This document shows positions 18,198-34,138 of a stretch of DNA of 64,000 nt, in pieces. Each line of letters begins with the position of its first letter. Within the stretch, counting starts at the first letter, position 1. The notes under the pieces are model-generated. The model saw nothing but the letters and a program-made list of their open reading frames with translations, had not been told where the DNA came from and searched no databases. Where the stretch lies: IMG/VR virus record IMGVR_UViG_3300034050_000451, positions 62,001 to 126,000 of that record. One strand, written 5' to 3'. Position numbers and translations under genes: made by a program.

Positions 18198-19065
18198 TTA
18201 ATCTACCCTTTAGTTCTTTAATTAATTCGTATGATATCATTAATGATGATACGTGATTATCAGAAACAGTCTTACCAATTTTAGTTTTATTTAAAACAGA
18301 TACAGTCTCAGCTAATTTAATTTTAGTAACTTTGTCATTGATAGACTTATGTAATACTTTTAATTCTTTTACTATTGATGGAATTTCCTTCTCAACGTAT
18401 TCTTTAAATTTAGTAGTATTGGTAATATTATTAATAAACTGCTTTAATAATTCTTTTTGACTTTCATCTAAATTAGAATATTTTTTATTAAACGTTTCTA
18501 CTAATATTTTGTAGGTAAGTAATCTTAAATCTTTATCTTGTTTTTTATAAGATTCTACTAATTTCTGAGCATCATCTGATTTTTCTACAATTACTGTTTG
18601 ATTCGATGTTATATTTTCAATTAAAGTAATTTTAGAATTAAAAATATCTTTAACATCATAATCTACCATATTCTTAGCTTCAAATACTTTATATATTGAT
18701 GCTAATACTTTATAGTTAGTTATTGGAGATGATAAGAAATCATCCATATCGAATGATTCATTAATCTTCTTAATAAGATTATATTTTTCTCTTTGTAATT
18801 TACTTTGATTGATACGGGTATGCGCTTCATTGATTGTATCAATAAATTTTTCAGCTCTGGATTCTGACTTATATTTCTCCTTTAGTAAGAGTTCATATAA
18901 TCTATGTTCTTTATTCAATTCAGTTTTTGGTGAAAAGAATTCTCTAACAATATGCTTTGCTTTTTCAGTCGCATCTCCATTAAGCACTTCTAATGTAATT
19001 TGCCTTACAAGAAGTTCAAATAGAATACCTGTGTTCTTAAATTTCGAATGTTTTACCTTCTTCAT
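18187..19065 (-). CDS. Conserved hypothetical protein next to portal
   Basis: 292-aa helical ORF (KHSKFKNTGILFELLVRQIT) with a late-type promoter. Confidence 0.65.
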   Translation of the reverse strand: MKKVKHSKFKNTGILFELLVRQITLEVLNGDATEKAKHIVREFFSPKTELNKEHRLYELLLKEKYKSESRAEKFIDTINEAHTRINQSKLQREKYNLIKKINESFDMDDFLSSPITNYKVLASIYKVFEAKNMVDYDVKDIFNSKITLIENITSNQTVIVEKSDDAQKLVESYKKQDKDLRLLTYKILVETFNKKYSNLDESQKELLKQFINNITNTTKFKEYVEKEIPSIVKELKVLHKSINDKVTKIKLAETVSVLNKTKIGKTVSDNHVSSLMISYELIKELKGRLNDK

Positions 19066-20902: not shown

Positions 20903-20933
20903 TTTTGTTTTTGTTTTTATAACCTTTATTAAT

Positions 20934-21341
20934 TTACCAAGCTTTACAACTCCAATACCTTGCTCCTGTTTTTGGACCAGGTGTATCACAATTGTGTCTT
21001 GCTCTAAATGATGCTCTTCGTTCTGGGTCTGATTTTTTAATTCTCATAGTTTCTTCACCTGCTGATTTTGCTGATGTTCCGCCATGCCCAAAATTTACTT
21101 TTACAACATTCCCTTTTGGATTGTTAACATATACTTTAAACTTCTTAACATCACCTCTCATCGGTTTATTGAGTTTTACCTCTCTTCCCTGATATTCGGC
21201 TTCGTTAACTTCCCCCTTTATGGTTTTTAAGAATTCTATGAATTCTTTTAAATCATCGTAGTTTTCAACATAATATTCAGTAACATCTTCTTCGAAAATG
21301 CCTCTGATTTCATTGTAAAGTTCTAAAGTATAATTTTCCAT
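20934..21341 (-). CDS. Conserved phage head-associated protein
   Basis: VNE-AEYQGREVKLNKP...KVNFG...SFRARHNC...ARYWSCKAW domain, common in T4-like phages. Confidence 0.7.
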   Translation of the reverse strand: MENYTLELYNEIRGIFEEDVTEYYVENYDDLKEFIEFLKTIKGEVNEAEYQGREVKLNKPMRGDVKKFKVYVNNPKGNVVKVNFGHGGTSAKSAGEETMRIKKSDPERRASFRARHNCDTPGPKTGARYWSCKAW

Positions 21342-21402: not shown

Positions 21403-22989
21403 TTATAACCATTTACTTAAATCTTCAATACTACCATCCCCAACGTTCATTTGCCAAGGATTACTATCCATATCGTTACCACCATAAACACCACTATAAG
21501 TATATGATGATATACTGTTAATAGCTTGTTTTGTTAAATCAATACCCTCTTGTCTTAATCTAAGTGATGTATCTCTAACCCAAAGTGATATGGCTAATGC
21601 CATCGTAAGGTCATCATTATAACCACGCATTGCCTCAGCTCTACCATTGTTCCAAATGAATGTAAATAACTCATCTATGGTTCTTACTGAACGGATTATG
21701 ATTGATTTTTCTCTTACATACTCCTCCAACTTTGAAATAATCAAAGGTCGGGTTCTTGATGTGGTTGAGAATCCAGCTACCATACTTCTATCCTCCGAAC
21801 GATATTTGTTTGATAATTGATTATCCACATCCACATATTTTAAATCTCGAGATGTATAATACAAATTAGTATATCCCCTATCCAATACTTGTTGAATAGC
21901 TGCCCAACCAATATTTGCGTTTTCAATTACCAATAGTGCGTTGTTATATTCGGTTGCTAATGATACTAAGAAATTTCCAAAATCCTTTGTATCCAACTTA
22001 CCTCTATATTCTGCTACTTGCGCAGATGCTTCAACATCAATAACGTGTGCGGTAGAGTAATCCGAAGAATCTCCCCTCGAAACGTCAGCTGATACTATGT
22101 AAGTTTTATTATAGTTAGGATATTCCCATCTCCAAAGGTTTCCATCAAATCCACCTTTTTCTACTGGGTCTTGCACAAATGTTTCTTTATAAAATTGTAG
22201 GAGTTGTGGTTCGATTACACTATCTCCAGAAGATACGAAATCACAATCACACTCTTGAGCTGCTCCCTTTGTTCCTAATAGAACCTCTTGTTCATCTCGC
22301 CAAGCTTGCTCTCTTTCAGGATGTACACTCCAATGGATTCTAATATTATTAAATGAGTTTGTTCCATCTTCAGAACCTACCCAAGTTTTGTGGAAAAAGT
22401 TTCCAACACCATTTGGTGTAGAAAGGATAATTGCGTTACCCCCAGTTGATAATGTAGATTGTGCAGATACCCATATATCTTCAATCTTATCGATAAATGC
22501 CGCCTCATCAAATACTAATAAAGATAGTGCTTCAGAACGACCAGCATCACTAGCAGCAGATGTTGCTTTGATTTGAGAGCCGTTTGCATATCTAAGTGAT
22601 AATTTGTTATCCTCCACCGTTGTTAGTTTTAACCAACTTGGTAGATATTGATTCATAACCCTTACCTTAGTTACTAAGTTTTTAGCAACCTCTTGCTTTG
22701 TTGCAATAACCAATACGTTAAAATCATCATTAAATAGCATTTTCCAAAGTGAGAAACCAGCAGTCAATGTTGAGATACCAGTTTGTCTTGATTTTAGAAT
22801 AATATTATAACGATGGTCTTTAAACTGAGTTAGTGTATCTTCTTGAAACGGAAAAAGGTGAAAGGGTATTTTACCTTTCACCGGATGTTGAATCATACAA
22901 TATTTTCGCATGAAGTATATCGGGTCTTTTGCACACTTTTGATATTCTTCAGCAATAATTTGTTTTAATGATTTCTTTACTTCAGCCAT
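21403..22989 (-). CDS. gp17: Terminase large subunit (T4 gp17-like)
   Basis: Walker A KSRQTGIST, Walker B LLVFDEAAF, STPNG, and nuclease motifs ADVSRG...DYS and NDDLTMA. Confidence 0.95.
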   Translation of the reverse strand: MAEVKKSLKQIIAEEYQKCAKDPIYFMRKYCMIQHPVKGKIPFHLFPFQEDTLTQFKDHRYNIILKSRQTGISTLTAGFSLWKMLFNDDFNVLVIATKQEVAKNLVTKVRVMNQYLPSWLKLTTVEDNKLSLRYANGSQIKATSAASDAGRSEALSLLVFDEAAFIDKIEDIWVSAQSTLSTGGNAIILSTPNGVGNFFHKTWVGSEDGTNSFNNIRIHWSVHPEREQAWRDEQEVLLGTKGAAQECDCDFVSSGDSVIEPQLLQFYKETFVQDPVEKGGFDGNLWRWEYPNYNKTYIVSADVSRGDSSDYSTAHVIDVEASAQVAEYRGKLDTKDFGNFLVSLATEYNNALLVIENANIGWAAIQQVLDRGYTNLYYTSRDLKYVDVDNQLSNKYRSEDRSMVAGFSTTSRTRPLIISKLEEYVREKSIIIRSVRTIDELFTFIWNNGRAEAMRGYNDDLTMALAISLWVRDTSLRLRQEGIDLTKQAINSISSYTYSGVYGGNDMDSNPWQMNVGDGSIEDLSKWL

Positions 22990-23684: not shown

Positions 23685-24362
23685 TTAAAGTTTTGAAACC
23701 AATTCATAATTCTTATCTTTTAATAATTCATATGCTGCGTTTCGTTTTTCTATAACTTCGATAAGTTCCAACTTACCACTATCAATATCTTTTTGTATTT
23801 CAGTTTTTAACTGCTCTACATCTTTATCATTTTGCCATCTTTCAACTGAGCCATCTTCGTTTACATACTCATGTATATTGGATACCTCTTTATATGCGTT
23901 GTTTAATTTTTCCAAAACATCCGTACCATAAGCTGCCATATTTGAATAAATTCTATATTCACTATATGCTTCCCATAAACCATCTTGTTTTATTTGAAAT
24001 TCTCGTCTAGCTAAACAGCCAGCACAATATCCAGTCTTTGAAATTAACTTCTTATCTGCATTTGAGTAGTTACCACTAACATCACAATCATTTGATTTAC
24101 AACTTGAAATTTGTTGTAAATAATTTCTAACTTCAGACATGGTATCACTACTCTTAGATTGTCTTACTCTACCATATTCTTTTTGTTCCCAAAGATAACC
24201 ATCTTTATCTTCCCAAATATCTCCAATGGTTCTGGAAACTTCCTCTTTTATATTAGAGAATCCAACTTGCGTATTTTTTTCGTATTCACCAGTCTGAACC
24301 ATATCAGCCAACTTTCTACGAGTTGGATGCATGAAACTTTTCTTAAATTCTGTATTAGCCAT
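23685..24362 (-). CDS. Hypothetical protein with a Cys cluster
   Basis: IGDIWEDKDGYLWEQKEYG, CxxxxC...CxxC. Confidence 0.65.
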   Translation of the reverse strand: MANTEFKKSFMHPTRRKLADMVQTGEYEKNTQVGFSNIKEEVSRTIGDIWEDKDGYLWEQKEYGRVRQSKSSDTMSEVRNYLQQISSCKSNDCDVSGNYSNADKKLISKTGYCAGCLARREFQIKQDGLWEAYSEYRIYSNMAAYGTDVLEKLNNAYKEVSNIHEYVNEDGSVERWQNDKDVEQLKTEIQKDIDSGKLELIEVIEKRNAAYELLKDKNYELVSKL

Positions 24363-24386
24363 AAATTGTTCTTATATATTCATATA

Positions 24387-24394
24387 TATAAGTA
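24387..24394 (-). promoter_or_regulatory. Putative phage late promoter (TACTTATA)
   Basis: Recurrent motif upstream of 24362. Confidence 0.55.
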
Positions 24395-24406
24395 TTGAAT
24401 TTTTTA

Positions 24407-27400
24407 CTATTCGTAAAATAATCCAAGAATTTGATTTAATGGTGCAAATGTACCTGTTAGTTTCATTGTATTTCCATTGTACACAAATACGATACCTTCG
24501 TTTGGAACTATTTTATCTTTTCCACCAATAGCGTTTAATCTTTGTAATTCCATTTTAAGTTTTGCTATCTTCTTTTCATCACCACCAGTCTTAACATCTG
24601 ATATAGTTTTATCTAATCTATCCTTCATAGCTCTAACCGCAGAATCAGGGTTTGCTGTAAGTACTGAACTCATAAATGAAAGTACTTCAGAGCCAACACC
24701 CAAAAATATATCCTCAAAAGGTCTAATATTATCCTTTGCTATCTTAGCGTGGTCATTCTTATCAATACCAGTTGCCCAACTTAATACTTTAGCATCGGTA
24801 ATGTTTTTATTGTCTAAACGGAATGATTTATCATAGAATGCCCATCTCTTAACCAATCCCATTAGAGTTCTATTATCAATCGGAGATGGTGATTTCTTAG
24901 TTACAAAATCAGTCCACCATGCTTGATGATAATCAGCAATACCATCCGTATCGGATAGTTTAAACTTAGATTGTAGTTTTGTAATCTGTCCACTATATTT
25001 TCCTTTTAATGAAGTTAAGTTTTTTGATTGTGGTAACTTAACAACTGGAGGTCCTTGTATTGTATAAGCCGATTGTACGTTTTGATTTACTTGCTTAATC
25101 ATACCAGCCAAAACTTTAGCTGCTTCTTGATTTTCACCAATTGCTATACCAGCTTCATTATATTCCATTGTTCCATGAAATACTAATAGTGCTTGTCCAT
25201 AAGGAATTACATTTACCGAAGTTGGATATATTACCTCCAAATTCATAAAACATGCACCATTCTTAAAAACTTTTTCTCTTTGTTTTTCTGAAAGTGATTT
25301 TATTGCTTTTGATAAATCACTCATAGCAAAGTTGTATGCTTTTTCTAACTCACCTCTTCCGGCAAACTTAGTAGCTACTCCATTTATATCCAATGCCTTC
25401 TCACCTCTATTAGCTAGATGTCCTTTGTTTCTAGCAGCAACTAATCTTCCATTCACCCAACTGATTGCTAATGCTTGTCCATCAGTTTTTTCTCTTGTCA
25501 ATTCCAACTTACCTTCTAATGCACGATTCACAATATCTTTAAGTTGTCCAAATGTTAAGTTAATTTCAGTATCAAATGGATGATTCATATGTCCATACGC
25601 ACCACCTTCAGTTAATAACCCCTCAGTTATGTTTGGGTTATTATCAGTTCCACATTTGTGACACATATAGGTATCACTTCCACCTTCAGAAATTTTCCAA
25701 CTCCAACCACAATTATCACAAATTACTTTACCATTTTCTACTCTTTCACTAATCCCACCACCCAATGCGTATGGTTCGTTATATTGTAATTTCTCAGCGT
25801 TAAATTTCTTTCTTAATCTTTTAAGAACTTCTTTATGTTTATCAATCCATGCTTGGTCTGGGTAACCCATTCCAATTCCTTCAAATGCTGATTTGGTTTT
25901 TACTTTATACCAACCACCACCCGGTGTTCTGAATATTCTTGCAGGTATTTCTAATATTCCATTTGATGGTAATTTAGAATGATACTTTGAATCAATATGA
26001 ACAACCTTTACAATGAATACTTTTTTCTTATTATCAGCTCCAATCAATTCAACTTCTAATGGAACTGCTACTCCACCTATTTTAAGTTTACCACCAAAGA
26101 TATTACCTTTAGTGTATGCTTCTTCTACTGATTTTTTAACCATTTCATATCCTTTATCTTCGGTATCCTTTGTATTTGTTTGATGACCAGGTTCTGTTTT
26201 TTTACTATCATCAAAATCAATTGTATCCAATTCTGCACCATATCCCATATCAGGTGTATATGTTCCCGATTTGTGATGTTGTAAAAAATTATGGTCTATT
26301 GTACCATCCGATTTATGATTTTTTGAATTAATATTTTCATTTTTACTTATTTCAATTGCTCTTAATTGCTTAAGTGCTTTCTCTTTAGTATCATGTGTTC
26401 CTAATCTATCACCACCATCCTTTGGATATACCACCCACTTACCATCAATATGTTTGATTGTTTCAACAGTCAATTTCATTGATTCTTTGCTTCTAAAATC
26501 TCTAGTTCCACCTTTATTATCTTTAAATCCGAATGATTTATAGAATTGGATTAATCTTCCCTTAGAACCCCCAAAATCAGATGATGGAGTTAAGAATACA
26601 TCTTTTTTGGTTTTCTTTGCATAAGTAATAATATCATTCATTACTTTTGTACCAATACCCTCACTTCTTTTTTCTTTTGGAACAACTATTCTGTGAATTT
26701 CTAAGTATTCTGGATATTCATATACATCCAATTCCACACCATGTTTTTTCCCCAAATGAGAGTCTAACGTTTCAGCAATTACTGATTCAAATTTATATTC
26801 AGGTGTTGTTGTTTTGAATTCACCTTTTCTCATTATAGTTTTTGCAATAGCTTTATTAGCTTGAAGCATAAATGGTATATTGATATTAGTTCTATTATCC
26901 TTTGCTACAACTTGGTTGTATTGAGTTAAGAATTCAACAAATTTCTTTTTATTTCTACCTAATCTTTTAAAGAACCCAGTTAGTTCTGCTGCTGATATTT
27001 CCTTACCATTTCTCGTATCATTTAATCTATCGAAAAAATGTTTATCAGTAAGAACGATATCAATTGGATTTAATTGTCTATCAGCGTATTTATCAATTTG
27101 TTGTAAATCAGCCATTGGGATTTCGTTAATTACCGATTCGTTTTTACCAGTATCTGCTTTTTTAGCAGCAACACCAATTTCTTCTGCAAATTTATTTGAC
27201 ATTGGTATCACATCCTTTATATCGGCATCAATAACAATAACTTTCATATTAGCAGGTTTCCCATCTCTAATTGCGTTTGTTGTTACAGCTGCCCAACGAT
27301 GATGACCATCCACTACATATCCATCTCTACTTACATAGATTGGAGCAGTAATCTTTGGATGATTCGGGTCATTCTCTAATGCCTTTGCCATACCAGCTAC

Positions 27401-28879
27401 CTTTGCACCAACTAATTCAGATTGAGTTGCTTTTAGAGAATCCGATGGTAATTCAGTTTGGATAGTTTTAATACCCTTTCTTTTCAATAGTTCTCTAAAC
27501 ATTGGTTCCGTATCAACTTCACCATTTATATCTTTTTCCATACTTGCCGCAGGTGAACCTTCGGTTGGTTTGCCTTTAAATTGTGGCATTTCCTCACGAG
27601 GAATTCCAGCATTACCAGCACAATATAAGTTTGTTCCAGCTACAGTTATTTTACATAAATTGTAATTAGGAGCTGCTTCACCATTTTCTTTTGCCTGATT
27701 TGTTAGTTGAACCAACTTATCAATCTGCATTGAAATTTCTCTTTGTTGCTTATTTGAAATTTTAGGAATATCCGATTCTGAACTAAATGTATCTGAATCT
27801 GCTTTTGGTAATACCTTAGTTACATTATCTAATGCAACATTTGGTATTTCAGTTTTGGGTTTTTCTTTTTGCTTAACATCAGGTGCATGTTTAAACATAT
27901 CCGAACCGGCTACTTTAGTTCCTTTAGATGGTTCCGATTTTGTATCACTAGCTCCATCTATTTTAACATACTTACCACCATCATTCTTTGAAAAAGATGG
28001 AGAAGATTCATCATCCTCTTTACCTTTTTGTTTATACACACCATGTCCAATATGAGTGTATTTGGAATCATCATTTTCATCTTCAAAGATTACTTGATAT
28101 CCTTCCTTTATCATTCTAAAAGTTGCTACCTTTTTACCATTGATAGTTGGCATTCCATGTTCATCTTTTCCAATAGTTTTTACAATAACTTTTTTATTTT
28201 TAAATCTACCCATTAAAATGGTATCTCCGATTTCAACATCTAATGTAATACCTTCATCTAAATTAATTGATTCTGGTAATTTGGAAAGTTTATCAACAAC
28301 CATATCAAAAATTGATTGATTGAATTTACCATAAGCTTTCTTTACAAAGAAATCTTTTTTATCCTCAGTACTACCTTTTTTTAAACCAATCCTAACATCA
28401 GTACCACTAATTGCATTTGGTTGTGCTGGTGATATAAAAACATACCCCCTATCAGCATATCCTTCCAATTCAATACTATCTTTGTATTTTTCAAAATACT
28501 TCCCACCCAAACGACTTGAATCTTTCTCACCAACCACAGTTATAAATGCAGTAGTTTCTTTATTGAATTTGCTTAGGATTTCAGTTGGAGCATAGGGATT
28601 TTTGACCTGAGCTATTTTGTTTGATGGGATACCAAACATAGTGGTCATTACCTTTACTTTCTCCTTAAAATTGAATGGGGATTTTTGATTGTCTGTTTTA
28701 TCAGAGGTTCCGATATAAACATTATTTTTTCCAAACTTTTTTACTAATGTTTGGTAAGTAGCGAAGTGCCCTTTATGAAAAGGTTGAAAGCGACCAGAGT
28801 AAACAACAACTAAGTCCTTTACACTGCTCGCTTCTCCTAATAATATACTCTCTACTAAAAACTTTGATAAATCACTCAT
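24407..28879 (-). CDS. Multidomain (polyvalent) protein: HIGH nucleotidyltransferase, ParB/Srx-like, GNAT, Zn-ribbon and ATP-dependent ligase-like domains
   Basis: GRFQPFHKGH; VVDGHHRWAA; VPKEKRSEGIGTKVM...FYKSFGF; CDNC...CHKC; EKTDG...EGIVF...MKLTG. Confidence 0.8.
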   Translation of the reverse strand: MSDLSKFLVESILLGEASSVKDLVVVYSGRFQPFHKGHFATYQTLVKKFGKNNVYIGTSDKTDNQKSPFNFKEKVKVMTTMFGIPSNKIAQVKNPYAPTEILSKFNKETTAFITVVGEKDSSRLGGKYFEKYKDSIELEGYADRGYVFISPAQPNAISGTDVRIGLKKGSTEDKKDFFVKKAYGKFNQSIFDMVVDKLSKLPESINLDEGITLDVEIGDTILMGRFKNKKVIVKTIGKDEHGMPTINGKKVATFRMIKEGYQVIFEDENDDSKYTHIGHGVYKQKGKEDDESSPSFSKNDGGKYVKIDGASDTKSEPSKGTKVAGSDMFKHAPDVKQKEKPKTEIPNVALDNVTKVLPKADSDTFSSESDIPKISNKQQREISMQIDKLVQLTNQAKENGEAAPNYNLCKITVAGTNLYCAGNAGIPREEMPQFKGKPTEGSPAASMEKDINGEVDTEPMFRELLKRKGIKTIQTELPSDSLKATQSELVGAKVAGMAKALENDPNHPKITAPIYVSRDGYVVDGHHRWAAVTTNAIRDGKPANMKVIVIDADIKDVIPMSNKFAEEIGVAAKKADTGKNESVINEIPMADLQQIDKYADRQLNPIDIVLTDKHFFDRLNDTRNGKEISAAELTGFFKRLGRNKKKFVEFLTQYNQVVAKDNRTNINIPFMLQANKAIAKTIMRKGEFKTTTPEYKFESVIAETLDSHLGKKHGVELDVYEYPEYLEIHRIVVPKEKRSEGIGTKVMNDIITYAKKTKKDVFLTPSSDFGGSKGRLIQFYKSFGFKDNKGGTRDFRSKESMKLTVETIKHIDGKWVVYPKDGGDRLGTHDTKEKALKQLRAIEISKNENINSKNHKSDGTIDHNFLQHHKSGTYTPDMGYGAELDTIDFDDSKKTEPGHQTNTKDTEDKGYEMVKKSVEEAYTKGNIFGGKLKIGGVAVPLEVELIGADNKKKVFIVKVVHIDSKYHSKLPSNGILEIPARIFRTPGGGWYKVKTKSAFEGIGMGYPDQAWIDKHKEVLKRLRKKFNAEKLQYNEPYALGGGISERVENGKVICDNCGWSWKISEGGSDTYMCHKCGTDNNPNITEGLLTEGGAYGHMNHPFDTEINLTFGQLKDIVNRALEGKLELTREKTDGQALAISWVNGRLVAARNKGHLANRGEKALDINGVATKFAGRGELEKAYNFAMSDLSKAIKSLSEKQREKVFKNGACFMNLEVIYPTSVNVIPYGQALLVFHGTMEYNEAGIAIGENQEAAKVLAGMIKQVNQNVQSAYTIQGPPVVKLPQSKNLTSLKGKYSGQITKLQSKFKLSDTDGIADYHQAWWTDFVTKKSPSPIDNRTLMGLVKRWAFYDKSFRLDNKNITDAKVLSWATGIDKNDHAKIAKDNIRPFEDIFLGVGSEVLSFMSSVLTANPDSAVRAMKDRLDKTISDVKTGGDEKKIAKLKMELQRLNAIGGKDKIVPNEGIVFVYNGNTMKLTGTFAPLNQILGLFYE

Positions 28880-28906: not shown

Positions 28907-28914
28907 TATAAATA
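28907..28914 (-). promoter_or_regulatory. Putative phage late promoter (TATTTATA)
   Basis: Recurrent motif upstream of the polyprotein gene. Confidence 0.6.
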
Positions 28915-28937: not shown

Positions 28938-29264
28938 TTATTTAGCCGCTTGCTCTTTAAAAGCTGGATTATAAGTAATAGTACCTTCTCTTAAATCGAT
29001 TTGACCTCTTGGGTATTCCTTTTCAAGACCAGCTACTAATTCTCTCATCGCATCATTTTGAGATTTAAAATCAGCTTCAGCTCTTTCTAAACCATCATGT
29101 AGTTTATCCATTTCTTCTTCTAATTCTTTTCTTCTCAAATAGATTTGCCCGAAAGCGTTTACTAATTCTTGAATTTTACCATTGCCTTCTCTTAGTGGAG
29201 TAAGGATATCTTCGGTTAATTCTACTGTAACTAACTCGATTTTTTGAATTGTTTCGTTTGCCAT
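28938..29264 (-). CDS. Small acidic coiled-coil protein (paralogue of 33811-34083)
   Basis: C-terminal YPRGQIDLREGTITY versus YPNGQIDLEAGTVVY in the paralogue. Confidence 0.7.
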   Translation of the reverse strand: MANETIQKIELVTVELTEDILTPLREGNGKIQELVNAFGQIYLRRKELEEEMDKLHDGLERAEADFKSQNDAMRELVAGLEKEYPRGQIDLREGTITYNPAFKEQAAK

Positions 29265-29310: not shown

Positions 29311-30063
29311 CTAACTGAAATTTTCAGAAATTACACTTACCCCACGTTTTTGTATAACCTGAGATGAACATCGATTTCCAAATATAATTGATTCATTAAT
29401 ATTATTTGTTTCCAAATACTTTGTAGTGAATCCTGCTACAAAAGTATCACCTGCTCCTGAGATATCCATTATCTCAACTTTATCAGTTGGATACATATTG
29501 TTTAAATACATACATCCATCTTTATCTAATGTGATTATTAGTTTTTCTAAAATCCATTCATTATTTTCAATAAATGATTTATTATTTTGATATTCGGTTC
29601 TGTTTAATTTAATGAACTTTAAATCAGTGCACCATTCTCCTAATTTTTTTTTAGTATCACAAATTGTATTAGGGTGATTAAATGCTATTTTAGCAATATC
29701 AGTATCACTTAGAAATCCTTTGTTATAATCCGATATGACTATCATATCAAAATCATAAAAATTTATTTCAGAAAGTGTATTACCAATAGGCGGAACTACA
29801 TCATCAATATCAACTCGTAAAAGTAAATGATTAAAACTTTCCTCAACATATCTCTTTTTTACAATCAATTGAGTATTACAAATCAATTCAGTTTTACAAC
29901 CCAATGCTTCTAAATTTTCTTTAACATTATAAGCCATACCACCATTGGTGATTGTATGTGATTCTATAAAAACAGGTGCAGGTCCTTCAGGTGATAATCG
30001 TGTAGCTTTTCCATAAACGAATTCATCTAAACATCCCTCACCTATAATTAATACTTTACTCAT
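29311..30063 (-). CDS. hldA: Heptose-7-phosphate kinase (HldE/RfaE domain I, PfkB family)
   Basis: IGEGCLDEFVYGKATRLSPEGPAPV, GGMAYNVKENL, SDYNKG and DISGAGDTF. Confidence 0.85.
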   Translation of the reverse strand: MSKVLIIGEGCLDEFVYGKATRLSPEGPAPVFIESHTITNGGMAYNVKENLEALGCKTELICNTQLIVKKRYVEESFNHLLLRVDIDDVVPPIGNTLSEINFYDFDMIVISDYNKGFLSDTDIAKIAFNHPNTICDTKKKLGEWCTDLKFIKLNRTEYQNNKSFIENNEWILEKLIITLDKDGCMYLNNMYPTDKVEIMDISGAGDTFVAGFTTKYLETNNINESIIFGNRCSSQVIQKRGVSVISENFS

Positions 30064-30445
30064 TTGTTAATATTTTAGTTGTACTGAAATCATCCATTCG
30101 ATTAAAATACACAATTGATTTTGCGTATTGTTCTCCCACTATTGGTTTATTTTTATAATCAGACCCAATTACAAATATATCAGGGTTATATGTTTTAATT
30201 ACATTTTCTAATAATTCAGCTGAATCAAATATAACTACTTTACTAACTCCTTTAATTCTTTCCAAATTATACTTTCGTTCTTCTTCAGTATGGAACGGTC
30301 TATCTTCTCCTTTTAATTCCTTTACTCTCCTATCGGAATCAATTCCAATAATAACAATATCACCAAAGGCAGATGCGAACTCAATCATCTTAAAATGCGC
30401 ATGATGTAAAACATCAAAACATCCATTTAACCAAACCTTTTTCAT
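30056..30445 (-). CDS. hldC: Heptose-1-phosphate nucleotidyltransferase (HldE/RfaE domain II)
   Basis: NGCFDVLHHAH, IDSDRRVKELKGEDRP, GSDY and FSTTKI. Confidence 0.85.
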   Translation of the reverse strand: MKKVWLNGCFDVLHHAHFKMIEFASAFGDIVIIGIDSDRRVKELKGEDRPFHTEEERKYNLERIKGVSKVVIFDSAELLENVIKTYNPDIFVIGSDYKNKPIVGEQYAKSIVYFNRMDDFSTTKILTNE

Positions 30446-31584
30446 AGAAACTTTTCTAATTCATTAATAACCATCTGAGATGTAATTGCTTTAGTACATT
30501 CAAATTGCCTATCCGTACCTTTATGGTCTGGACACCAATTCCAATCACCAGCATCTAATTTTAATCGGTTAAAGCATCCACCACATTTATCTTTAGGTGA
30601 AGTTATTCTAACACAATCTTGCATTTCTGCCCAATCATATGAGAATCCACTAATCAATACCGTCTTTGTACCCAATGCCCAACTTAACCAACTTAACCCA
30701 CTACCAATACCAATGAATGCTTTTGATTTTCTCATTTCATCCATTACTTTTTCCAAAGAACCGGCTGGGTGTTTGACTACTCCAGTTGGGTGTTTATTAC
30801 CCATATAATCATTATTCTCTTGTGATAATAGTTTAACTGTATAACCTTTATCATTTAACCAATTCACTACTTCTTGCCAACCATTTGGGTTATTCCAATA
30901 CTTAGATTGAGCAGTTCCATGTATTGCTATTGTTATTAACTTATCATCTTTAACAATATCTGATGATGGTAACTTTGGTTTTATTTCTTTATATGGTAAT
31001 CCCAATATATCAGAACCCATTTTTTGCATTGTTTGGGATTTAAAATCGTTTGGATTTTTTCTGTTATTTACACTACCATCTTCATTATAGAATAAACCAA
31101 CAGTATACATTGCGTATAAATTTTCAACACTTTGACCTGGTTTTACAAATTCTATATTTGGATATTGTGACTCTAACATTTCGTTATGAAATGTAGATAC
31201 AATTAATTCACAATTATGTACTTTCTGAAATTCGTCAAAGTATGGAAACCATGCTAATGTATCACCCAATGCTTTTGATGATAGTGCTAGATAAACTCTC
31301 TTATTAGTTGCGGTATAATCATGTTCAAAAAATAAAGTATTACCTTCCCATATTTCAATTCTCCAATCTATAAAATACTCAATATTACATTTAGCCCAAG
31401 TATTGTTTGATAATTCGGTTGTGAATAAAACATTACCATTACGTTTGTTTATAAACTTAACATTGTATTTACCCGTTTGGTTTCCCAATACTTCAGCCCA
31501 AGGACCATTTACGAAATGATAATTTACTTTATTTCGTACTTCAACAATGTTATTTAAATTTTTAGTTAATTTATCGTAAATCAT
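30442..31584 (-). CDS. Aah/TibC-type (autotransporter) protein O-heptosyltransferase
   Basis: N-terminal beta domain (YFIDWRIEI), LGDTLAWFPY, TAQSKYWNNPNGW, FIGIGSGLSWLSW...LISGFS and the Cys set CGGC...WCPDH...FECTKAIT; start placed at the TAATG overlap (31584; alternative 31593). Confidence 0.88.
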   Translation of the reverse strand: MIYDKLTKNLNNIVEVRNKVNYHFVNGPWAEVLGNQTGKYNVKFINKRNGNVLFTTELSNNTWAKCNIEYFIDWRIEIWEGNTLFFEHDYTATNKRVYLALSSKALGDTLAWFPYFDEFQKVHNCELIVSTFHNEMLESQYPNIEFVKPGQSVENLYAMYTVGLFYNEDGSVNNRKNPNDFKSQTMQKMGSDILGLPYKEIKPKLPSSDIVKDDKLITIAIHGTAQSKYWNNPNGWQEVVNWLNDKGYTVKLLSQENNDYMGNKHPTGVVKHPAGSLEKVMDEMRKSKAFIGIGSGLSWLSWALGTKTVLISGFSYDWAEMQDCVRITSPKDKCGGCFNRLKLDAGDWNWCPDHKGTDRQFECTKAITSQMVINELEKFL

Positions 31585-33746
31585 TAATTCCATTTTTTTA
31601 CTTCTCTATCAATAAGAGAAAATCCATCTGCTTGTTTAACATACATTTTATTTGTAGTATATCGTAATTTAGATTCTTTATTAAACACATCAGTTAACCA
31701 TAAATCATATCCCTCCCATAGGGTATCATTAAATCTATCAATCCACCAACTCTTTGTTCTATTTGGTATTAGATACGCATGTGCTAAATCTTGGTTTGAT
31801 GCAGTTTTACTGAATAAATCATCAATGTATTCTTTACTTCTGGAATTATTGTTTGATAATCCAATAAAGTAAACATCATCTCTTTCAGAAATAAAACATG
31901 CTTTATGAACTGCTTCAACAAATTCTTTTAATCCAGTGAATATAAACGCATCAGCTTCAAATACTAATGTATAATCAAATTCATCATCCATAGCTTCTAA
32001 TGCTCCCCTATGTGCGTTAAAGCACCCATAATGCCTACCCGTTAATGGACCTAATCCATTCCCAAAGTTTCCCGGCTTATCCGATATCTGATTTGGTCTT
32101 TTACAAAAATCAGATGGTGGTGTTCCATCAAATGGAGTATTTACAATTGGTTGATACACCATTCCATAACTTTCCAATTGTTTTAGTGATTCTGAACTAA
32201 TTTGTTCTCTCAAATCATTTGGCTTAGTCATCAAATGTTTAATTTGAATCTTTGGTTTTTTTCTAACAAATGAACGATATACGTGCTTTGCTTGATTATA
32301 AAAAAATTCATCAGCTGCTCTAGTAACCCCCGGAAAGAAACTTCCACCATAATCATCTCCACTAATAACACCACCCGGTTTTACTTTATGATACCAAAAG
32401 TTTAAATCGGATTTTAAAGAATCATAAGTATGACCCGCATCCAACATAATAAAATCAATTGAGTTATGTTGAAATTGATTTGATGCGTTTTCAGATGTAT
32501 CCTTTATTACGTTAAATAATTTTGAGTTATTACTTAACATAGTATTTTCCATAAATTCTGAAAATATATCCCCACCAAATCCACCAACTATTGTATCATG
32601 TATTTCTTCACCATCGGTACCTTTCCAAGTATCAACAGTTGTAAATTTAATATCTTTATTAGAATCTTTAATTAAGGTAGCCATATGATTGGTTGATTTA
32701 CCCAACCATGCACCCAACTCAACAAATACATCACCATCGGTTCCATTTTCAACCATTTCATTATACAAATGTTCATATGAAAACCAACCAGGAATTTCAT
32801 TAAATTCAGGTTGTAGTTTTTCTAATATAATTTGTTTGGTTTGATTTAGGTTATCATCGATATAAGTAACCAATTCATTATTATCATATGAATCCAAATA
32901 TGTGTGTAGTTTTCTGAATATAGATGGTAATCCATATCCCAATGCCTCTTTAATAGATAATGGATTTAATTCCAATTTAGAACTAAAGTAAAACATATCC
33001 GATGCTTTGTAGAATTTATCTACATCACTACGTTCACCCCATACAATACAATTATCAGGTTTGTGTTTCATTATTGGTCCCCAATATGATTCAAAGTTCA
33101 TAGCTTGGTTTCCGATAAAATGAAATTTAATTTTATATTTTTCTAATAATCTAGCTACGTTGAATATTTCACCCTGATTCTTACCTTCAGTAAATAATCC
33201 AACCATAAGAACATGCTTCCAATCAGATTCAAATCCCAATTCGTTTTTGAATTCGTTTTTATCATACTCAATAGTTTCTATTGGATAATCCCATACACGT
33301 GTATCTACTCCCACCAATTCAAATCTTCGTCTACTCCATTCAGATACTAAAACATATCTATCTGGATGATATTTGATTTCATTTGGATTTGTATGAGAAC
33401 CATGTGTAGATGCTACAATATAGTAATTTCTACTATTGTCAAAAATAGTATCTAATATATTGTGAGCTAAAAAATGTTCGGGGATTTCCGTAAAATGAAT
33501 TATGTTTGGTTGAGTTGATTTAATAATATCCACAAGTTCGGATTTATTATCACCCAATGTGTACAACTTACATAAATCAGCTATTTGATTCTTTTGTACT
33601 ACAAAGGCATCACCAGAGTGATTGTTTACCTCAACTACCTCAATATCAAATTTATCTTTAAAGATTTGAATTTGCTTTAAAAGGTATTGTGGCATCCCAC
33701 CAGTTGAGAGATGGGATGCTATATATAACAATTTTTGTTTTGACAT
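31584..33746 (-). CDS. Tri-domain enzyme: GT-B (GT4-like) glycosyltransferase, class I SAM methyltransferase and GT25-like glycosyltransferase
   Basis: HLSTGGMPQY...ELNPLSIKEALGYGLP; VELGAWLGKS...LDAGHTY...VKPGGVISGDDY; YGCFNAH...LVFEADA...AHAYLI. Confidence 0.8.
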   Translation of the reverse strand: MSKQKLLYIASHLSTGGMPQYLLKQIQIFKDKFDIEVVEVNNHSGDAFVVQKNQIADLCKLYTLGDNKSELVDIIKSTQPNIIHFTEIPEHFLAHNILDTIFDNSRNYYIVASTHGSHTNPNEIKYHPDRYVLVSEWSRRRFELVGVDTRVWDYPIETIEYDKNEFKNELGFESDWKHVLMVGLFTEGKNQGEIFNVARLLEKYKIKFHFIGNQAMNFESYWGPIMKHKPDNCIVWGERSDVDKFYKASDMFYFSSKLELNPLSIKEALGYGLPSIFRKLHTYLDSYDNNELVTYIDDNLNQTKQIILEKLQPEFNEIPGWFSYEHLYNEMVENGTDGDVFVELGAWLGKSTNHMATLIKDSNKDIKFTTVDTWKGTDGEEIHDTIVGGFGGDIFSEFMENTMLSNNSKLFNVIKDTSENASNQFQHNSIDFIMLDAGHTYDSLKSDLNFWYHKVKPGGVISGDDYGGSFFPGVTRAADEFFYNQAKHVYRSFVRKKPKIQIKHLMTKPNDLREQISSESLKQLESYGMVYQPIVNTPFDGTPPSDFCKRPNQISDKPGNFGNGLGPLTGRHYGCFNAHRGALEAMDDEFDYTLVFEADAFIFTGLKEFVEAVHKACFISERDDVYFIGLSNNNSRSKEYIDDLFSKTASNQDLAHAYLIPNRTKSWWIDRFNDTLWEGYDLWLTDVFNKESKLRYTTNKMYVKQADGFSLIDREVKKWN

Positions 33747-33810: not shown

Positions 33811-34083
33811 TTAATAAACTACCGTCCCAGCTTCTAAATCAATTTGTCCATTTGGATATTTAATATCCAATTCAGCAAGTTCGGTATTCATATCAGCAAT
33901 AGATTTATCGATTCTATTACCAAATTCTTTTTCTTGAGATTCAATATCTGCAATTTGAGATTGTAATTGTCTTTTACGAACAGCCGATTGTCCCAATGCA
34001 ATAATCATATTGTTTTGTTCTTCTTGAATTGATTTTAATTTATCAATTACCGATTGTTCTAATTGTTCAGTTTTTTGTTCCAT
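33811..34083 (-). CDS. Small acidic coiled-coil protein (paralogue of 28938-29264)
   Basis: LGQ...coiled coil...YPNGQIDLEAGTVVY. Confidence 0.7.
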   Translation of the reverse strand: MEQKTEQLEQSVIDKLKSIQEEQNNMIIALGQSAVRKRQLQSQIADIESQEKEFGNRIDKSIADMNTELAELDIKYPNGQIDLEAGTVVY

Positions 34084-34107
34084 AATTATTGTGTTTGTAT
34101 ATTCATA

Positions 34108-34115
34108 TATAAGTA
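34108..34115 (-). promoter_or_regulatory. Putative phage late promoter (TACTTATA)
   Basis: Recurrent motif upstream of 34083. Confidence 0.55.
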
Positions 34116-34138
34116 TATACTTTTTTATTTAAACGAAA

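What the first reader, a model, noticed from the sequence alone, without database searches (positions are those of the whole stretch)
24407..28879. 1490-aa enzyme polyprotein punctuated by prohead-protease-type sites
Seen, N to C: a HIGH-family nucleotidyltransferase (GRFQPFHKGH); ESINLDE; a small beta domain; a ParB/Srx-like domain (VDGHHRWAA, about 27150-27800); ESVINE; a domain with HFFDRL...KTIMRK (possibly RNase-like, low confidence); ESVIAE; a GNAT acetyltransferase (about 26470-26770); a small IKHIDGKWVVY domain; SVEE; another module; a Zn ribbon; ITEGLLTE; and a ligase-like domain. The linkers match those in the head proteins and the gene has a late-type promoter. Inference: it is made late, packaged in the prohead, cut by gp21 into separate enzymes and injected as a ready-made host-takeover or anti-defence kit. 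That would be viral-style polyprotein processing in a tailed phage.
Basis: partly seen in the sequence, partly recalled or inferred. Interest (0 to 1): 0.82.

Follow-up and report, generated by a model that had tools for sequence, protein, structure and literature searches.

The report
Protease-jointed cargo polyprotein of a jumbo phage
A 1490-residue gene of a roughly 250-kb T4-like phage strings about a dozen small enzymes together with joints that look like cutting sites for the phage's own head protease, so it is probably loaded into the head, cut apart and injected as a ready-made takeover and repair kit, although no cleavage or packaging has been shown.

Summary

The phage is a distant T4 relative. 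It encodes a gp21-type S77 prohead protease at 16016..16603.

The protein is a chain of about 12 modules. They include an NMN-adenylyltransferase-like domain, ParB/Srx-like and GNAT domains, a zinc ribbon and a C-terminal RNA-ligase-like domain.

More than 1700 clusters of relatives share the two end domains but shuffle the middle modules. Module junctions almost always end in [V/I/L]-x-Glu and never in Asp, which is the gp21 cleavage pattern. Near-identical relatives gain or lose whole modules from one such Glu to the next.

The N-terminus, MSDLSKFLVE, matches the T4 capsid-targeting decapeptide MKTYQEFIAE at the four positions known to matter. A distant cyanophage homologue with the same kind of leader has been detected in virions by mass spectrometry.

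The best reading is a capsid-targeted, protease-cut cargo polyprotein. This would be a new variant of "polyvalent proteins". Cleavage, packaging and ejection remain untested. The upstream octamer is not the T4 late promoter in sense orientation.

The parts
28907..28914 (-). Upstream octamer TATTTATA (sense orientation), 27 nt before the ATG. It is shared with ten minus-strand genes in the window and may be a phage promoter element.
   Evidence: Eleven of 14 copies are intergenic (P = 8e-13). It is the reverse complement of T4's late TATAAATA.
28832..28879 (-). Leader, aa 1-16: MSDLSKFLVE|SILLGE|. It resembles a capsid-targeting sequence and is predicted to be a helix.
   Evidence: It matches T4 IPII/IPIII MKTYQEFIAE| at positions 4, 7, 8 and 10 (PMC9026906). 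It is conserved across the family. AF2 predicts a helix at aa 2-14.
28253..28831 (-). NMN/NaMN-adenylyltransferase-like HIGH nucleotidyltransferase, aa 17-209, ending in KLPE|SINLDE|.
   Evidence: Pfam PF01467. pLDDT above 90. Foldseek best hits are NadD/NadM/NMNAT, E = 7e-5, probability 1.0. tblastn relatives are phage NadM-type enzymes.
28103..28252 (-). Small beta module, aa 210-259, ending in FRMIKE|.
   Evidence: AF2 predicts beta strands at 220-246. It is found in 119 of the 120 best homologues, each time preceded by x-[VIL]-x-E.
27668..28102 (-). aa 260-404: the linker YQVIFE|, a small beta domain (269-309), a disordered stretch (310-369) and a helix.
   Evidence: AF2: aa 269-309 have pLDDT around 90 and aa 310-369 are below 50.
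27122..27667 (-). ParB/Srx-like domain, aa 405-586 (VDGHHRWAA), ending in NESVINE|.
   Evidence: phrog_2859 at 3.5e-23 and phrog_2159 (ParB-like) at 1.7e-3. Hits to large virion proteins of F116-like and N4-like phages. AF2 folds aa 425-574.
26786..27121 (-). Module aa 587-698 (HFFDR...NIPF...AKTIMRK...YKFE|), possibly a RegB-like endoribonuclease. It is present in all 120 best homologues.
   Evidence: Invariant residues are H, R, D, R, N, D, N, K, T, R and the terminal E. Four of 18 members give weak hits to Pfam RegB_T4, best 8e-4. hhalign is not significant. AF2 confidence is low.
26462..26785 (-). Spacer SVIAE| (aa 699-703) and GNAT acetyltransferase (aa 704-806), ending in KLTVE|.
   Evidence: Pfam GNAT hits lie just under the cut-offs; PHROG acetyltransferase hits; DarB-like proteins of phages Parlo and Skulduggery match. 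The 98%-identical relative P0002 lacks exactly this block, Glu to Glu.
26336..26461 (-). DUF2188-like small domain, aa 807-848 (IKHIDGKWVVY).
   Evidence: Pfam DUF2188 at 0.029, which is weak. phrog_3684 at 1.4e-10. AF2 pLDDT is 73-80.
26120..26335 (-). Disordered spacer, aa 849-920, ending in KKSVEE|.
   Evidence: pLDDT below 50 over aa 845-923.
25874..26119 (-). Beta-rich module, aa 921-1002, ending in SAFE|.
   Evidence: AF2 pLDDT around 90 for aa 924-994. It is present in 30 of the 120 best homologues.
25745..25873 (-). Helical module, aa 1003-1045 (GYPDQAWIDKH...YALGGGISE|).
   Evidence: AF2 predicts a helix at 1009-1028.
25607..25744 (-). Zinc ribbon (aa 1046-1083) and double joint ITE|GLLTE| (aa 1084-1091).
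   Evidence: Weak Pfam zinc-ribbon hits. aa 1084-1094 have pLDDT below 50 in both models. The double site is kept before the C-terminal domain in 168 distinct contexts.
24410..25606 (-). RNA-ligase-like covalent nucleotidyltransferase domain, aa 1092-1490 (GGAYGHMNHPFD...EKTDG...EGIVF...KLTG).
   Evidence: 1759 cluster representatives, almost always at the C-terminus. Invariant K-x-D-G, E, E-G and K. AF2 pLDDT 93.4. Best PDB hits are Rnl3, T4 Rnl1 and Rnl2, at E about 3e-3 and TM about 0.25. RNA ligases also dominate the distant hits in BFVD.
16016..16603 (-). Prohead core serine protease (S77, gp21 homologue), the proposed processing enzyme.
   Evidence: Pfam PF03420 at 2e-25. phrog_207. 32% identity to T4 gp21, E = 9e-24.
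14329..15465 (-). 378-aa head-module protein with five ESVxxE sites (ESVLSE, ESVNE, two ESVVTE, ESVNEEE). It is a likely protease substrate and a reference for the site motif.
   Evidence: 5 sites against 0.06 expected.
16629..17732 (-). 367-aa head-module protein with the site IKESVNE|A.
11077..12717 (-). Major capsid protein (gp23-like) with the propeptide site QLLDE|ATQ.
   Evidence: phrog_138. The alignment with T4 gp23 places it near the T4 site FLTE65|A.

Best explanation
The gene encodes a capsid-targeted cargo polyprotein of a T4-related jumbo phage of about 250 kb.

Proposed sequence of events:
1. It is transcribed from the same kind of upstream element as several other minus-strand genes, including two next to the portal gene (shown only as a shared motif).
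2. Its N-terminal decapeptide MSDLSKFLVE acts like the T4 capsid-targeting sequence and takes the whole chain into the scaffolding core of the prohead (inferred).
3. The gp21-type S77 protease then cuts after Glu at the [V/I/L]-x-E sites in each disordered linker (inferred). This frees up to about a dozen modules: an NMN-adenylyltransferase-like enzyme, small beta domains, a ParB/Srx-like domain, a possibly RegB-like domain, a GNAT acetyltransferase, a zinc ribbon and an RNA-ligase-like enzyme.
4. These stay in the head and enter the cell with the DNA (inferred).

Why this design would pay: one targeting signal loads many cargos in fixed amounts. Because any module flanked by a cut site will work, lineages swap modules freely. 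This mosaicism and the Glu-to-Glu cassette gain and loss among near-identical relatives are shown.

Relatives carry a polynucleotide-kinase-type P-loop domain, HD, CCA-adding-type and 2H phosphoesterase modules next to the ligase-like domain. The conserved business is therefore probably RNA (tRNA) repair and nucleotide or NAD-related chemistry, supplied ready-made so that it works even if host defences have already blocked phage protein synthesis (inferred).
For: 1. Protease. An S77 protease homologous to T4 gp21 lies in the same head module.

2. Linkers. The 11 residues before the C-terminal domain (ITEGLLTEGGA) are disordered in a model with mean pLDDT 93.

3. Sites elsewhere in the head module. 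The ES[VI]x(1-3)E sites are far above chance and recur in two head-module proteins flanking the protease gene (14329..15465, 16629..17732). The capsid protein has LLDE|A in its N-terminal region, upstream of the T4 site FLTE65|A in the alignment.

4. Family-wide joints.
- 2727 full-length hits and 1759 50%-identity clusters share the end domains and shuffle the middle modules.
- Of 505 homology breakpoints found without reference to the motif, 49% lie within 3 aa of a [LIVFM]xE glutamate, against 11% of random positions.
- The residue before each module start is Glu in 86/87, 45/49, 5/5, 3/3, 9/10 and 134/165 distinct contexts for six module types. It is never Asp. P3 is mostly V, I or L. This is the gp21 pattern, and Asp is known to block T4 processing (PMC9026906).

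5. Cassette indels in near-identical relatives run from one joint Glu to the next. P0002 lacks exactly SVIAE...KLTVE (108 aa). P0001 has an extra 65-aa module together with one extra site (ESVNE).

6. Leader. It matches the T4 IPII/IPIII CTS at positions 4, 7, 8 and 10. It is conserved across the family, and stand-alone C-terminal-domain proteins carry short leaders ending in a hydrophobic-x-E|GG.

7. Virion evidence from a relative. S-CREM2 gp154 is a distant homologue of the nucleotidyltransferase domain (E = 6e-6) with the leader MKNFSSFLTE|A. It was detected in purified virions by mass spectrometry (PMC10665884).

8. Gene position. The gene lies just upstream of the terminase and portal genes, and this position is kept in relatives.

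9. Module families. The ParB-like and GNAT modules match parts of large virion proteins and of proteins annotated 'DarB-like antirestriction' in other phages.
Against: - There is no direct evidence of late expression, packaging, cleavage or ejection for this protein or any close relative.
- [LIV]xE is common: 18 in this protein, about half of them inside folded domains. Site presence alone is weak evidence.
- The extended ES[VI] prefix is absent from many relatives.
- Junction Glu residues could be relics of leaders from once-separate genes.
- The shared short DNA (GAATCAGTA...) could serve recombination rather than proteolysis.
- The upstream octamer is in the opposite orientation to T4's late promoter, and in two genes it sits only 4 nt from the ATG.
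- Small released modules of 40-60 aa might leak out of the head, as T4 scaffold fragments do.
- The S-CREM2 homologue is distant (23% identity) and was seen with only 3 peptides.
Confidence: 0.6

Rival explanations
1. It is a virion-delivered polyvalent protein that stays in one piece, or loses only its N-terminal leader, like N4 virion RNA polymerase or P1 DarB. On this view the Glu-ending joints are flexible-linker features or relics of leaders from formerly separate packaged genes, and most are not cut.
For: Known polyvalent proteins can be packaged unprocessed (PMC5512222). Known S77-type substrates in T4, phiKZ and SPN3US mostly lose propeptides rather than being divided into several mature parts. 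Module 587-698 exists as part of a separate 252-aa protein with its own leader in Flavobacterium phage immuto.
Against: Relics would drift, yet P1 is Glu and never Asp across several hundred distinct junction contexts in six module types, and P3 stays V/I/L. Double sites (ITE|GLLTE|, E|SVIAE|) and exposed disordered linkers inside a prohead containing a Glu-specific protease would be hard to protect from cutting.
Confidence: 0.2
2. It is a cytoplasmic multi-enzyme that is not packaged, made during infection for RNA repair and NAD or nucleotide metabolism. The conserved joints are then linker or recombination signals that allow module shuffling.
For: The NMNAT-like and RNA-ligase-like enzymes of other phages act in the cytoplasm. 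Kinase, HD, CCA-type and 2H modules in relatives fit ordinary RNA-repair operons (PMC7824862). Joint DNA shares short identical stretches. Some stand-alone C-terminal-domain proteins start directly at MGGAYGH with no leader.
Against: This does not explain the CTS-like leader conserved at the four functionally important positions. It does not explain the strict Glu-not-Asp rule, the identical sites in head-module proteins next to the protease, the position among packaging and head genes, or the virion detection of a homologue.
Confidence: 0.13
3. It is mainly a structural core or 'inner body' component of the large head. It is cut up by the protease and largely expelled, and its enzyme-like domains are incidental.
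For: T4 core proteins are cut into fragments that leave the head (PMC9026906). The protein has long disordered acidic and basic stretches.
Against: Catalytic signatures are invariant across more than 50 diverse relatives: HxGH and SGTxxR in the nucleotidyltransferase, K-x-D-G and E-G in the ligase-like domain. That argues for selected enzyme activity. The rapid turnover of modules is typical of conflict effectors, not scaffolds.
Confidence: 0.05

Closest known systems
T4 internal head proteins IPI/IPII/IPIII and Alt (capsid-targeting sequence plus gp21 processing)
   Same: The phage has a gp21-type S77 protease. The N-terminal decapeptide has a hydrophobic residue at position 4, F at 7, I/L at 8 and E at 10. 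Cleavage-type [L/I/V]-x-E sites are present. The presumed role is as injected anti-defence or takeover proteins.
   Different: The T4 proteins are single-function cargos that lose short terminal propeptides. Here one leader would carry about 12 modules separated by internal sites, and the module set is hypervariable between lineages.
Polyvalent proteins of phages and conjugative elements (Iyer et al. 2017, PMC5512222), e.g. P1 DarB/DdrB
   Same: Many effector domains sit in one chain, including ParB-like, GNAT, nucleotidyltransferase and possibly a BECR-type RNase. Relatives show extreme domain mosaicism. The gene lies in a head or late neighbourhood. Delivery with the DNA is predicted.
   Different: No zincin (MPTase), MuF or other domain proposed there for processing or packaging was found. 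Processing would instead be by the prohead protease at standardised joints, and targeting by a T4-type leader. The conserved NMNAT-like and RNA-ligase-like 'bookends' are not described in that paper as far as I could search.
Ejection and inner-body proteins of phiKZ, 201phi2-1 and SPN3US, cut by S77-type proteases
   Same: Jumbo phage; many head-internal proteins; cleavage after Glu following a short motif; multiple cuts within some proteins.
   Different: Their motif is A/S/G-x-E. The cuts remove or fragment propeptides. No enzyme polyprotein with a cut site at each domain border has been reported.
T4-like cyanophage and pelagiphage 'cytidylyltransferase' (T4-GC0190), e.g. S-CREM2 gp154, S-CAM7, HTVC008M gp130
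   Same: It is a distant homologue of the N-terminal nucleotidyltransferase. It has the same kind of leader (MKNFSSFLTE|A, MKSFLNFLFE|A). S-CREM2 gp154 was detected in virions by mass spectrometry.
   Different: These proteins are much shorter (287-597 aa), only 23% identical and without the ligase-like end in S-CREM2. They have never been interpreted as CTS-bearing or protease-cut.
T4 tRNA repair (Pnkp plus Rnl1) against anticodon nucleases
   Same: The C-terminal domain is RNA-ligase-like. Relatives add P-loop kinase, HD, CCA-adding-type and 2H modules.
   Different: The T4 enzymes are separate early cytoplasmic proteins. Here they would be pre-made and injected. The ligase-like fold is very divergent (TM about 0.25) and its activity is unknown.
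Polyproteins of eukaryotic RNA viruses (e.g. the picornavirus 3C protease)
   Same: One translation product would be cut by a viral protease at short consensus sites between domains.
   Different: There the polyprotein is the gene-expression strategy for the whole genome. Here it would be a packaging and delivery device inside a capsid, and the protease is unrelated.

Membership tests
T4-type CTS-targeted, gp21-processed internal head proteins | The phage encodes an S77 (gp21-type) prohead protease. | tested here: met
   PF03420 at 2e-25. 32% identity to T4 gp21, E = 9e-24.
T4-type CTS-targeted, gp21-processed internal head proteins | An N-terminal leader of about 10 aa with targeting residues at positions 4 and 7 and processing residues at 8 and 10 (Glu). 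| tested here: met
   MSDLSKFLVE compared with T4 MKTYQEFIAE, read from NC_000866. The rule is taken from PMC9026906. The leader is conserved in the family. This is sequence resemblance only.
T4-type CTS-targeted, gp21-processed internal head proteins | Cleavage after Glu at L/I-x-E by the prohead protease. | not testable with these tools
   Sites are present in disordered linkers and conserved at the junctions. Cutting itself has not been observed.
T4-type CTS-targeted, gp21-processed internal head proteins | Presence in the mature head and ejection with the DNA. | not testable with these tools
   The only evidence is indirect: the distant homologue S-CREM2 gp154 was found in virions by mass spectrometry (PMC10665884).
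Polyvalent proteins (Iyer et al. 2017) | Several unrelated effector domains in one polypeptide. | tested here: met
   About 12 modules, at least five of them enzyme-like.
Polyvalent proteins (Iyer et al. 2017) | Extensive domain-architecture mosaicism among relatives. | tested here: met
Polyvalent proteins (Iyer et al. 2017) | A neighbourhood of late or virion genes. | tested here: met
   Three small ORFs separate the gene from the terminase large subunit, which is followed by the portal, protease and capsid genes.
Polyvalent proteins (Iyer et al. 2017) | Typical accessory domains linked to processing or packaging (zincin MPTase, MuF). | tested here: not met
   None was found in the Pfam or PHROG scans of the whole protein. 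Phage immuto's 907-aa protein does contain an HEMIHH motif, which I read as a zincin signature without testing it.
ATP-dependent RNA/DNA ligase (covalent nucleotidyltransferase) superfamily | Motif I, K-x-D-G, with an invariant lysine. | tested here: met
   EKTDG (K1131, D1133, G1134) is invariant in 56 sequences.
ATP-dependent RNA/DNA ligase (covalent nucleotidyltransferase) superfamily | The nucleotidyltransferase fold. | tested here: inconclusive
   The top 20 or so PDB hits are all RNA or DNA ligases, but E is about 3e-3 and TM about 0.25. There is no sequence hit to PDB or Pfam.
ATP-dependent RNA/DNA ligase (covalent nucleotidyltransferase) superfamily | Ligase or adenylyltransferase activity. 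| not testable with these tools
NMN/NaMN adenylyltransferase (HIGH-family nucleotidyltransferase) | The (T/H)xGH motif, the second SxTxxR-type motif and the Rossmann-like fold. | tested here: met
   FHKGH and ISGTDVR are present, with H38, T160 and R163 invariant. Foldseek gives NadD/NadM/NMNAT at probability 1.0. The substrate is unknown.
ParB/Srx superfamily | A DGHHR-type motif and a family profile match. | tested here: inconclusive
   VDGHHRW is present. PHROG ParB-like gives 1.7e-3 and phrog_2859 gives 3.5e-23. There is no Pfam ParBc hit at E of 1 or below.
GNAT acetyltransferases | A profile match and the R/Q-x-x-G-x-G/A acetyl-CoA motif. | tested here: inconclusive
   Pfam scores are 24.1 against a cut-off of 27, and 20.0 against 20.7. 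PHROG acetyltransferase gives 5.6e-5. The motif RSEGIG is present.
RegB/BECR-type endoribonucleases | A profile match and the catalytic H-x-x-x-R. | tested here: inconclusive
   Four of 18 members hit PF10715, best 8e-4. hhalign probability is 0.3%, although HFFDR aligns with RegB HLLDR. The AF2 model of this module is poor.

The most novel reading that the evidence does not exclude
Prohead-protease sites act as universal joints in a plug-and-play cargo carrier. One capsid-targeting leader and two conserved 'bookend' enzymes (NMNAT-like and RNA-ligase-like) carry an open-ended, fast-turning set of effector modules into the head. There the gp21-type protease separates them, so each virion injects a pre-made multi-enzyme kit: RNA repair, NAD or nucleotide chemistry, DNA- and protein-modifying modules. 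The kit would work even when host defences have already stopped phage translation. This would be a widespread but undescribed delivery system of aquatic T4-like and jumbo phages, comprising more than 1700 protein clusters.
Probability: 0.4. Interest if true: 0.85.

Novelty: new variant of a known kind. Interest (0 to 1): 0.7.

Why it matters
If the joints are really cut, tailed phages would have a polyprotein-based way to load and deliver many enzymes with a single targeting signal. That would explain how head-internal arsenals diversify so quickly, because any module flanked by a cut site is automatically packaged and released.

It would extend the 'polyvalent protein' idea to T4-like phages through a different processing route, the morphogenetic protease instead of an in-built zincin.

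It points to pre-packaged RNA repair as a counter to defences that block translation.

It also gives a simple sequence rule (leader plus [V/I/L]-x-E joints) for finding injected proteins in uncultured phages, and for designing cargo delivery in engineered T4-type capsids.

The claim is directly testable by virion proteomics or by co-expression with the protease.

Tried and rejected
- Megablast of the gene against 50,697 phage records found nothing.
- Sequence searches of the C-terminal domain, the middle region, and the profiles of the C-terminal domain and of module 587-698 against PDB gave only chance-level hits.
- The ESM Atlas search of module 587-698 returned only unnamed viral clusters.
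- hhalign of that module against T4 RegB was not significant. AlphaFold gave low confidence for it, so its fold is unresolved and its low pLDDT cannot be read as disorder.
- I tested whether the upstream element is T4's late promoter TATAAATA. It is that octamer only on the opposite strand, and its overall count is at chance (17 against 17.3). Only its intergenic placement is significant.
- I considered that the bare [LIV]xE motif might be enriched in the protein. It is not.
- HSP end-point profiles were noisy, so I replaced them with breakpoint peaks and module-start logos.
- I considered that the joints are DNA recombination linkers. The shared DNA is only what the shared amino acids and the AT-rich codon usage would give, about 9-12 nt. 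This neither supports nor excludes the idea.
- Literature searches for Mel-JY01, DUF5661 and 'cytitidyltransferase' found nothing.
- Context look-ups for P0140 and P0254 returned gene lists but no DNA.
- No intein, frameshift or internal stop is involved. The ORF is intact on at least 20 contigs read, from an index listing it in 136 collection blocks.

Full report
**What is there.**
The window is AT-rich (about 31% G+C) and all its long ORFs lie on the minus strand. ORF 24407..28879 is an intact 1490-codon ATG ORF.

The surrounding genes identify a distant T4 relative:
- terminase large subunit, 21403..22989
- portal, 19133..20989
- S77 prohead core protease, 16016..16603 (Pfam PF03420, 2e-25)
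- acidic scaffold-like protein, 12756..13778 (my reading of its 25% Glu content; no family hit)
- gp23-type major capsid protein, 11077..12717

The capsid protein is about 52% identical to those of Flavobacterium phage immuto, Microcystis phage Mel-JY01 and the uncultured 484-kb phage LR756508, and 29% identical to T4-type Aeromonas phages. The protease is 32% identical to T4 gp21 (E = 9e-24). The same 1490-aa protein occurs on metagenomic contigs of 243 and 271 kb, so the phage is a jumbo phage.

**Anatomy of the protein.**
Profile searches, two AlphaFold models and Foldseek give the following chain.
- aa 1-16: leader, predicted helix.
- aa 17-209: HIGH-family nucleotidyltransferase. pLDDT is above 90. 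The best structural neighbours are NaMN/NMN adenylyltransferases (NadD, NadM, archaeal NMNAT; E = 7e-5, probability 1.0), and its sequence relatives in phages are NadM-type enzymes.
- aa 210-259: small beta module.
- aa 269-309: second small beta domain, followed by a disordered stretch.
- aa 405-586: ParB/Srx-like domain (VDGHHRW; PHROG hits; matches to parts of large virion proteins of F116-like and N4-like phages).
- aa 587-698: highly conserved module of unknown function.
- aa 704-806: GNAT. Its Pfam scores fall just under the cut-offs, and it matches proteins annotated 'DarB-like antirestriction' in phages Parlo and Skulduggery.
- aa 807-848: DUF2188-like domain.
- aa 849-920: disordered spacer.
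- aa 921-1002: beta-rich module (pLDDT about 90).
- aa 1003-1045: short helical module.
- aa 1046-1083: zinc ribbon.
- aa 1092-1490: C-terminal domain.

The C-terminal domain model is excellent (mean pLDDT 93.4). An alignment of 56 diverse relatives shows an invariant K-x-D-G, further invariant Glu, Glu-Gly and Lys residues, and an invariant GxxH..HPF head. Its best PDB neighbours are all RNA ligases (Rnl3, T4 Rnl1, Rnl2) and other covalent nucleotidyltransferases, but only weakly (E about 3e-3, TM about 0.25). RNA ligases also dominate the distant viral hits. I therefore call it RNA-ligase-like, not a demonstrated ligase.

Module 587-698 has an invariant set of H, R, D, R, N, D, N, K, T and R. 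It gives weak hits to the T4 RegB endoribonuclease family in 4 of 18 members. HFFDR aligns with RegB's HLLDR in a non-significant profile comparison.

**Are the linkers real joints?**
Three independent lines say yes.

First, structure. pLDDT is below 50 at aa 205-211, 255-268, 575-589, 653-702, 780-806, 845-923, 995-1007, 1029-1044 and 1082-1100. ITEGLLTEGGA is also disordered in the high-confidence C-terminal model. One caveat: module 587-698 was itself poorly modelled, so low confidence there does not prove disorder.

Second, comparative mosaicism. A search with the whole protein found 2727 relatives, and the C-terminal domain alone found 1759 clusters at 50% identity. It nearly always lies at the C-terminus of proteins of 400-1930 aa. 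The two end domains are 65-95% identical to the query among the best 120 hits, while the middle is a shuffled set of modules.
- Homology breakpoints were defined without reference to any motif. Of 505 in 140 non-redundant proteins, 49% lie within 3 aa of a [LIVFM]-x-E glutamate, against 11% of random positions.
- The residue just before each module start is Glu in 86/87 (beta module), 45/49 (587-698), 5/5 (GNAT), 3/3 (DUF2188-like), 9/10 (zinc ribbon) and 134/165 (C-terminal domain) distinct sequence contexts. It is never Asp. P3 is mostly V, I or L.
- A strict Glu-not-Asp rule in otherwise variable, disordered linkers is what a Glu-specific protease would impose. In T4, Asp at the corresponding position blocks processing (PMC9026906).

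Third, cassette indels in near-identical relatives run from joint to joint.
- P0002 (95-98% identical) lacks exactly SVIAE...KLTVE, so YKFE|SVIAE|TLD... becomes YKFE|TIKH...
- P0004 lacks GNAT plus the DUF2188-like domain in the same way.
- P0001 carries an extra 65-aa module together with one extra site (ESVNE).
- P0011 carries an extra 136-aa module right after KLPE|.

Mel-JY01 has only the two end domains, joined by ...NNNIIAE|GGLGGHMNHPFD. LR756508 has ParB first and its joints read LLDESIKYME, GKESVTDE and LDESVDRKIE.

**Do the joints match the head proteins?**
Yes. ES[VI]x(1-3)E occurs 13 times in the window's ORFs:
- four in this protein (0.13 expected from shuffles)
- five in the 378-aa protein 14329..15465, close downstream of the protease gene (0.06 expected)
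- one in the 367-aa protein 16629..17732

The capsid protein has QLLDE|ATQ in its N-terminal region, upstream of T4 gp23's FLTE65|A in the alignment. Phage immuto's 841-aa protein upstream of its terminase gene has NESVNE| and KESLNE|.

**Is it targeted to the head?**
I read the T4 IPII and IPIII leaders from the T4 genome: MKTYQEFIAE|A. The window protein starts MSDLSKFLVE|SILLGE|A. It shares a hydrophobic residue at position 4, F at 7, I/L at 8 and E at 10. Mutagenesis has tied exactly these positions to targeting (4, 7) and processing (8, 10) (PMC9026906). The leader is conserved throughout the family (M-N/S-E/D-L-S-K/Q-F-L-V-E-S-I-L-(L)-G-E). Stand-alone versions of the C-terminal domain mostly carry short leaders ending in a hydrophobic-x-E|GG, for example MKTFLDFSKQTLVE|GG.

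The N-terminal nucleotidyltransferase is distantly related to the 'cytidylyltransferase' core gene of T4-like cyanophages and pelagiphage HTVC008M (557 phage records). S-CREM2 gp154 (E = 6e-6 to the query domain) starts MKNFSSFLTE|A and S-CAM7's starts MKSFLNFLFE|A. S-CREM2 gp154 was detected in purified virions by mass spectrometry, with 3 peptides (PMC10665884). This is the only experimental hint of packaging, and it concerns a distant relative.

**Expression signal.**
The sense strand has TATTTATA 27 nt before the ATG. The octamer is found before ten minus-strand genes, among them 18187..19065 and 20934..21341 beside the portal gene, and 28938..29264; most of the others have no assigned function. 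Eleven of 14 copies are intergenic (P = 8e-13). It is the reverse complement of T4's late TATAAATA, so calling it a 'late-type promoter' is an inference. In two genes it lies only 4 nt from the ATG. It was not found upstream of the primase gene (the SbcCD-like gene overlaps its upstream neighbour and has no intergenic space).

**Likely function.**
- Shown: a chain of enzyme-like modules with standardised, disordered, Glu-ending joints; a gp21-type protease and matching sites in head proteins; a CTS-like leader; rapid module turnover.
- Inferred: entry into the prohead core through the leader, cutting at the joints by the protease, retention of the modules and ejection with the DNA.

The module repertoire of 69 diverse relatives includes DUF5661 (20), a polynucleotide-kinase-type P-loop domain, HD, CCA-adding-type polymerase head, 2H phosphoesterase, zeta-toxin-type kinase and GNAT. 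Together with the ligase-like bookend this points to RNA (tRNA) end-healing and sealing. The NMNAT-like bookend points to NAD or nucleotide chemistry. Supplying such enzymes ready-made would make sense against defences that stop translation or drain NAD before the phage can express anything. That last step is reasoning, not evidence.

**Comparison with known systems.**
- Its proposed mechanism most resembles the T4 CTS/gp21 system for IPI-III and Alt. Those are single cargos that lose only terminal propeptides.
- Its architecture most resembles the polyvalent proteins of Iyer et al. (PMC5512222). It lacks their zincin and MuF domains. [quoted passage not shown]
- S77-type proteases of phiKZ and SPN3US cut many ejection proteins after Glu, sometimes several times within a propeptide. 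No multi-enzyme polyprotein is reported for them.
- Two broad surveys of jumbo phages and of NAD-related systems do not mention this architecture in the passages I could search.

I therefore rate it a new variant of known kinds, not a new category.

**Verdict.**
The interpretation passed every sequence-based test I could apply, but it lacks any direct evidence of cleavage or packaging. My estimates are 0.6 for a capsid-targeted, protease-cut cargo polyprotein, 0.2 for packaged but essentially uncut, 0.13 for cytoplasmic and 0.05 for mainly structural.

Noticed in passing
window 14329..15465 (-): This 378-aa head-module protein has five ESVxxE sites (after aa 20, 26, 171, 244 and about 323). 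It looks like a small polyprotein of internal head proteins. It has no Pfam or PHROG match.
   Followed up: partly
window 29311..33746 (-): A gene cluster lies just upstream of the polyprotein: a PfkB-type kinase (250 aa), a small cytidylyltransferase-like protein annotated in PHROGs as heptose kinase/adenylyltransferase (129 aa), a GT9/TibC-like heptosyltransferase (383 aa) and a 720-aa glycosyltransferase plus methyltransferase. This could be an ADP-heptose-type pathway that glycosylates a phage or host target. The synteny is kept in relatives.
   Followed up: partly
window 24363..24406 and 34084..34138 (sense = minus strand): A second, different upstream element, TACTTATATATGAATATA, precedes the 225-aa gene 23685..24362 (directly downstream of the polyprotein) and gene 33811..34083. 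A similar AATACTTATAAAG lies before the 2789-aa gene. This may be another promoter class.
   Followed up: no
window 34552..42921 (-): This 2789-aa ORF has a tail-fibre gp53-like C-terminal domain. Just before it, at about aa 2209-2511, are weak Hint, pretoxin-HINT and intein-splicing matches, suggesting a HINT-type autoprocessing module inside a giant fibre-like protein.
   Followed up: no
window 43202..46333 (-): A single 1043-aa ORF matches both the SbcD-like (N-terminal) and SbcC-like (C-terminal) nuclease subunits. The two proteins, which are separate in T4 (gp47 and gp46), appear to be fused here.
   Followed up: no
L001:2668-5391 (Flavobacterium phage immuto, 907 aa, annotated NadR): This relative's protein combines what look like a Pol-beta-type nucleotidyltransferase motif (GDLDIIV), a HIGH nucleotidyltransferase motif (GGFKPPHLAH) and a zincin motif (HEMIHH). 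These motif readings were not tested with profiles. It looks like a classical MPTase-bearing polyvalent protein in a phage of the same clade. Its 252-aa and 841-aa neighbours carry module 587-698 and ESVNE/ESLNE sites.
   Followed up: partly
L009:2450-4240 (Pelagibacter phage HTVC008M gp130, 597 aa): The pelagiphage 'cytidyltransferase' is itself multi-module, with Glu-ending stretches such as EDTVNE|ELINE|. Unlike the cyanophage versions, it lacks the F-L-x-E leader (it starts MKTLKELLRK).
   Followed up: no
window 51288..55544, 55592..57004 and others (-): A long run of large ORFs (1418, 470, 400, 354, 354 and 677 aa) has no PHROG match (and no Pfam match for the 1418- and 677-aa ORFs, the only ones scanned against Pfam). 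Two of them have TATTTATA only 4 nt before the ATG, which would mean leaderless transcripts if the octamer is a -10 element.
   Followed up: no
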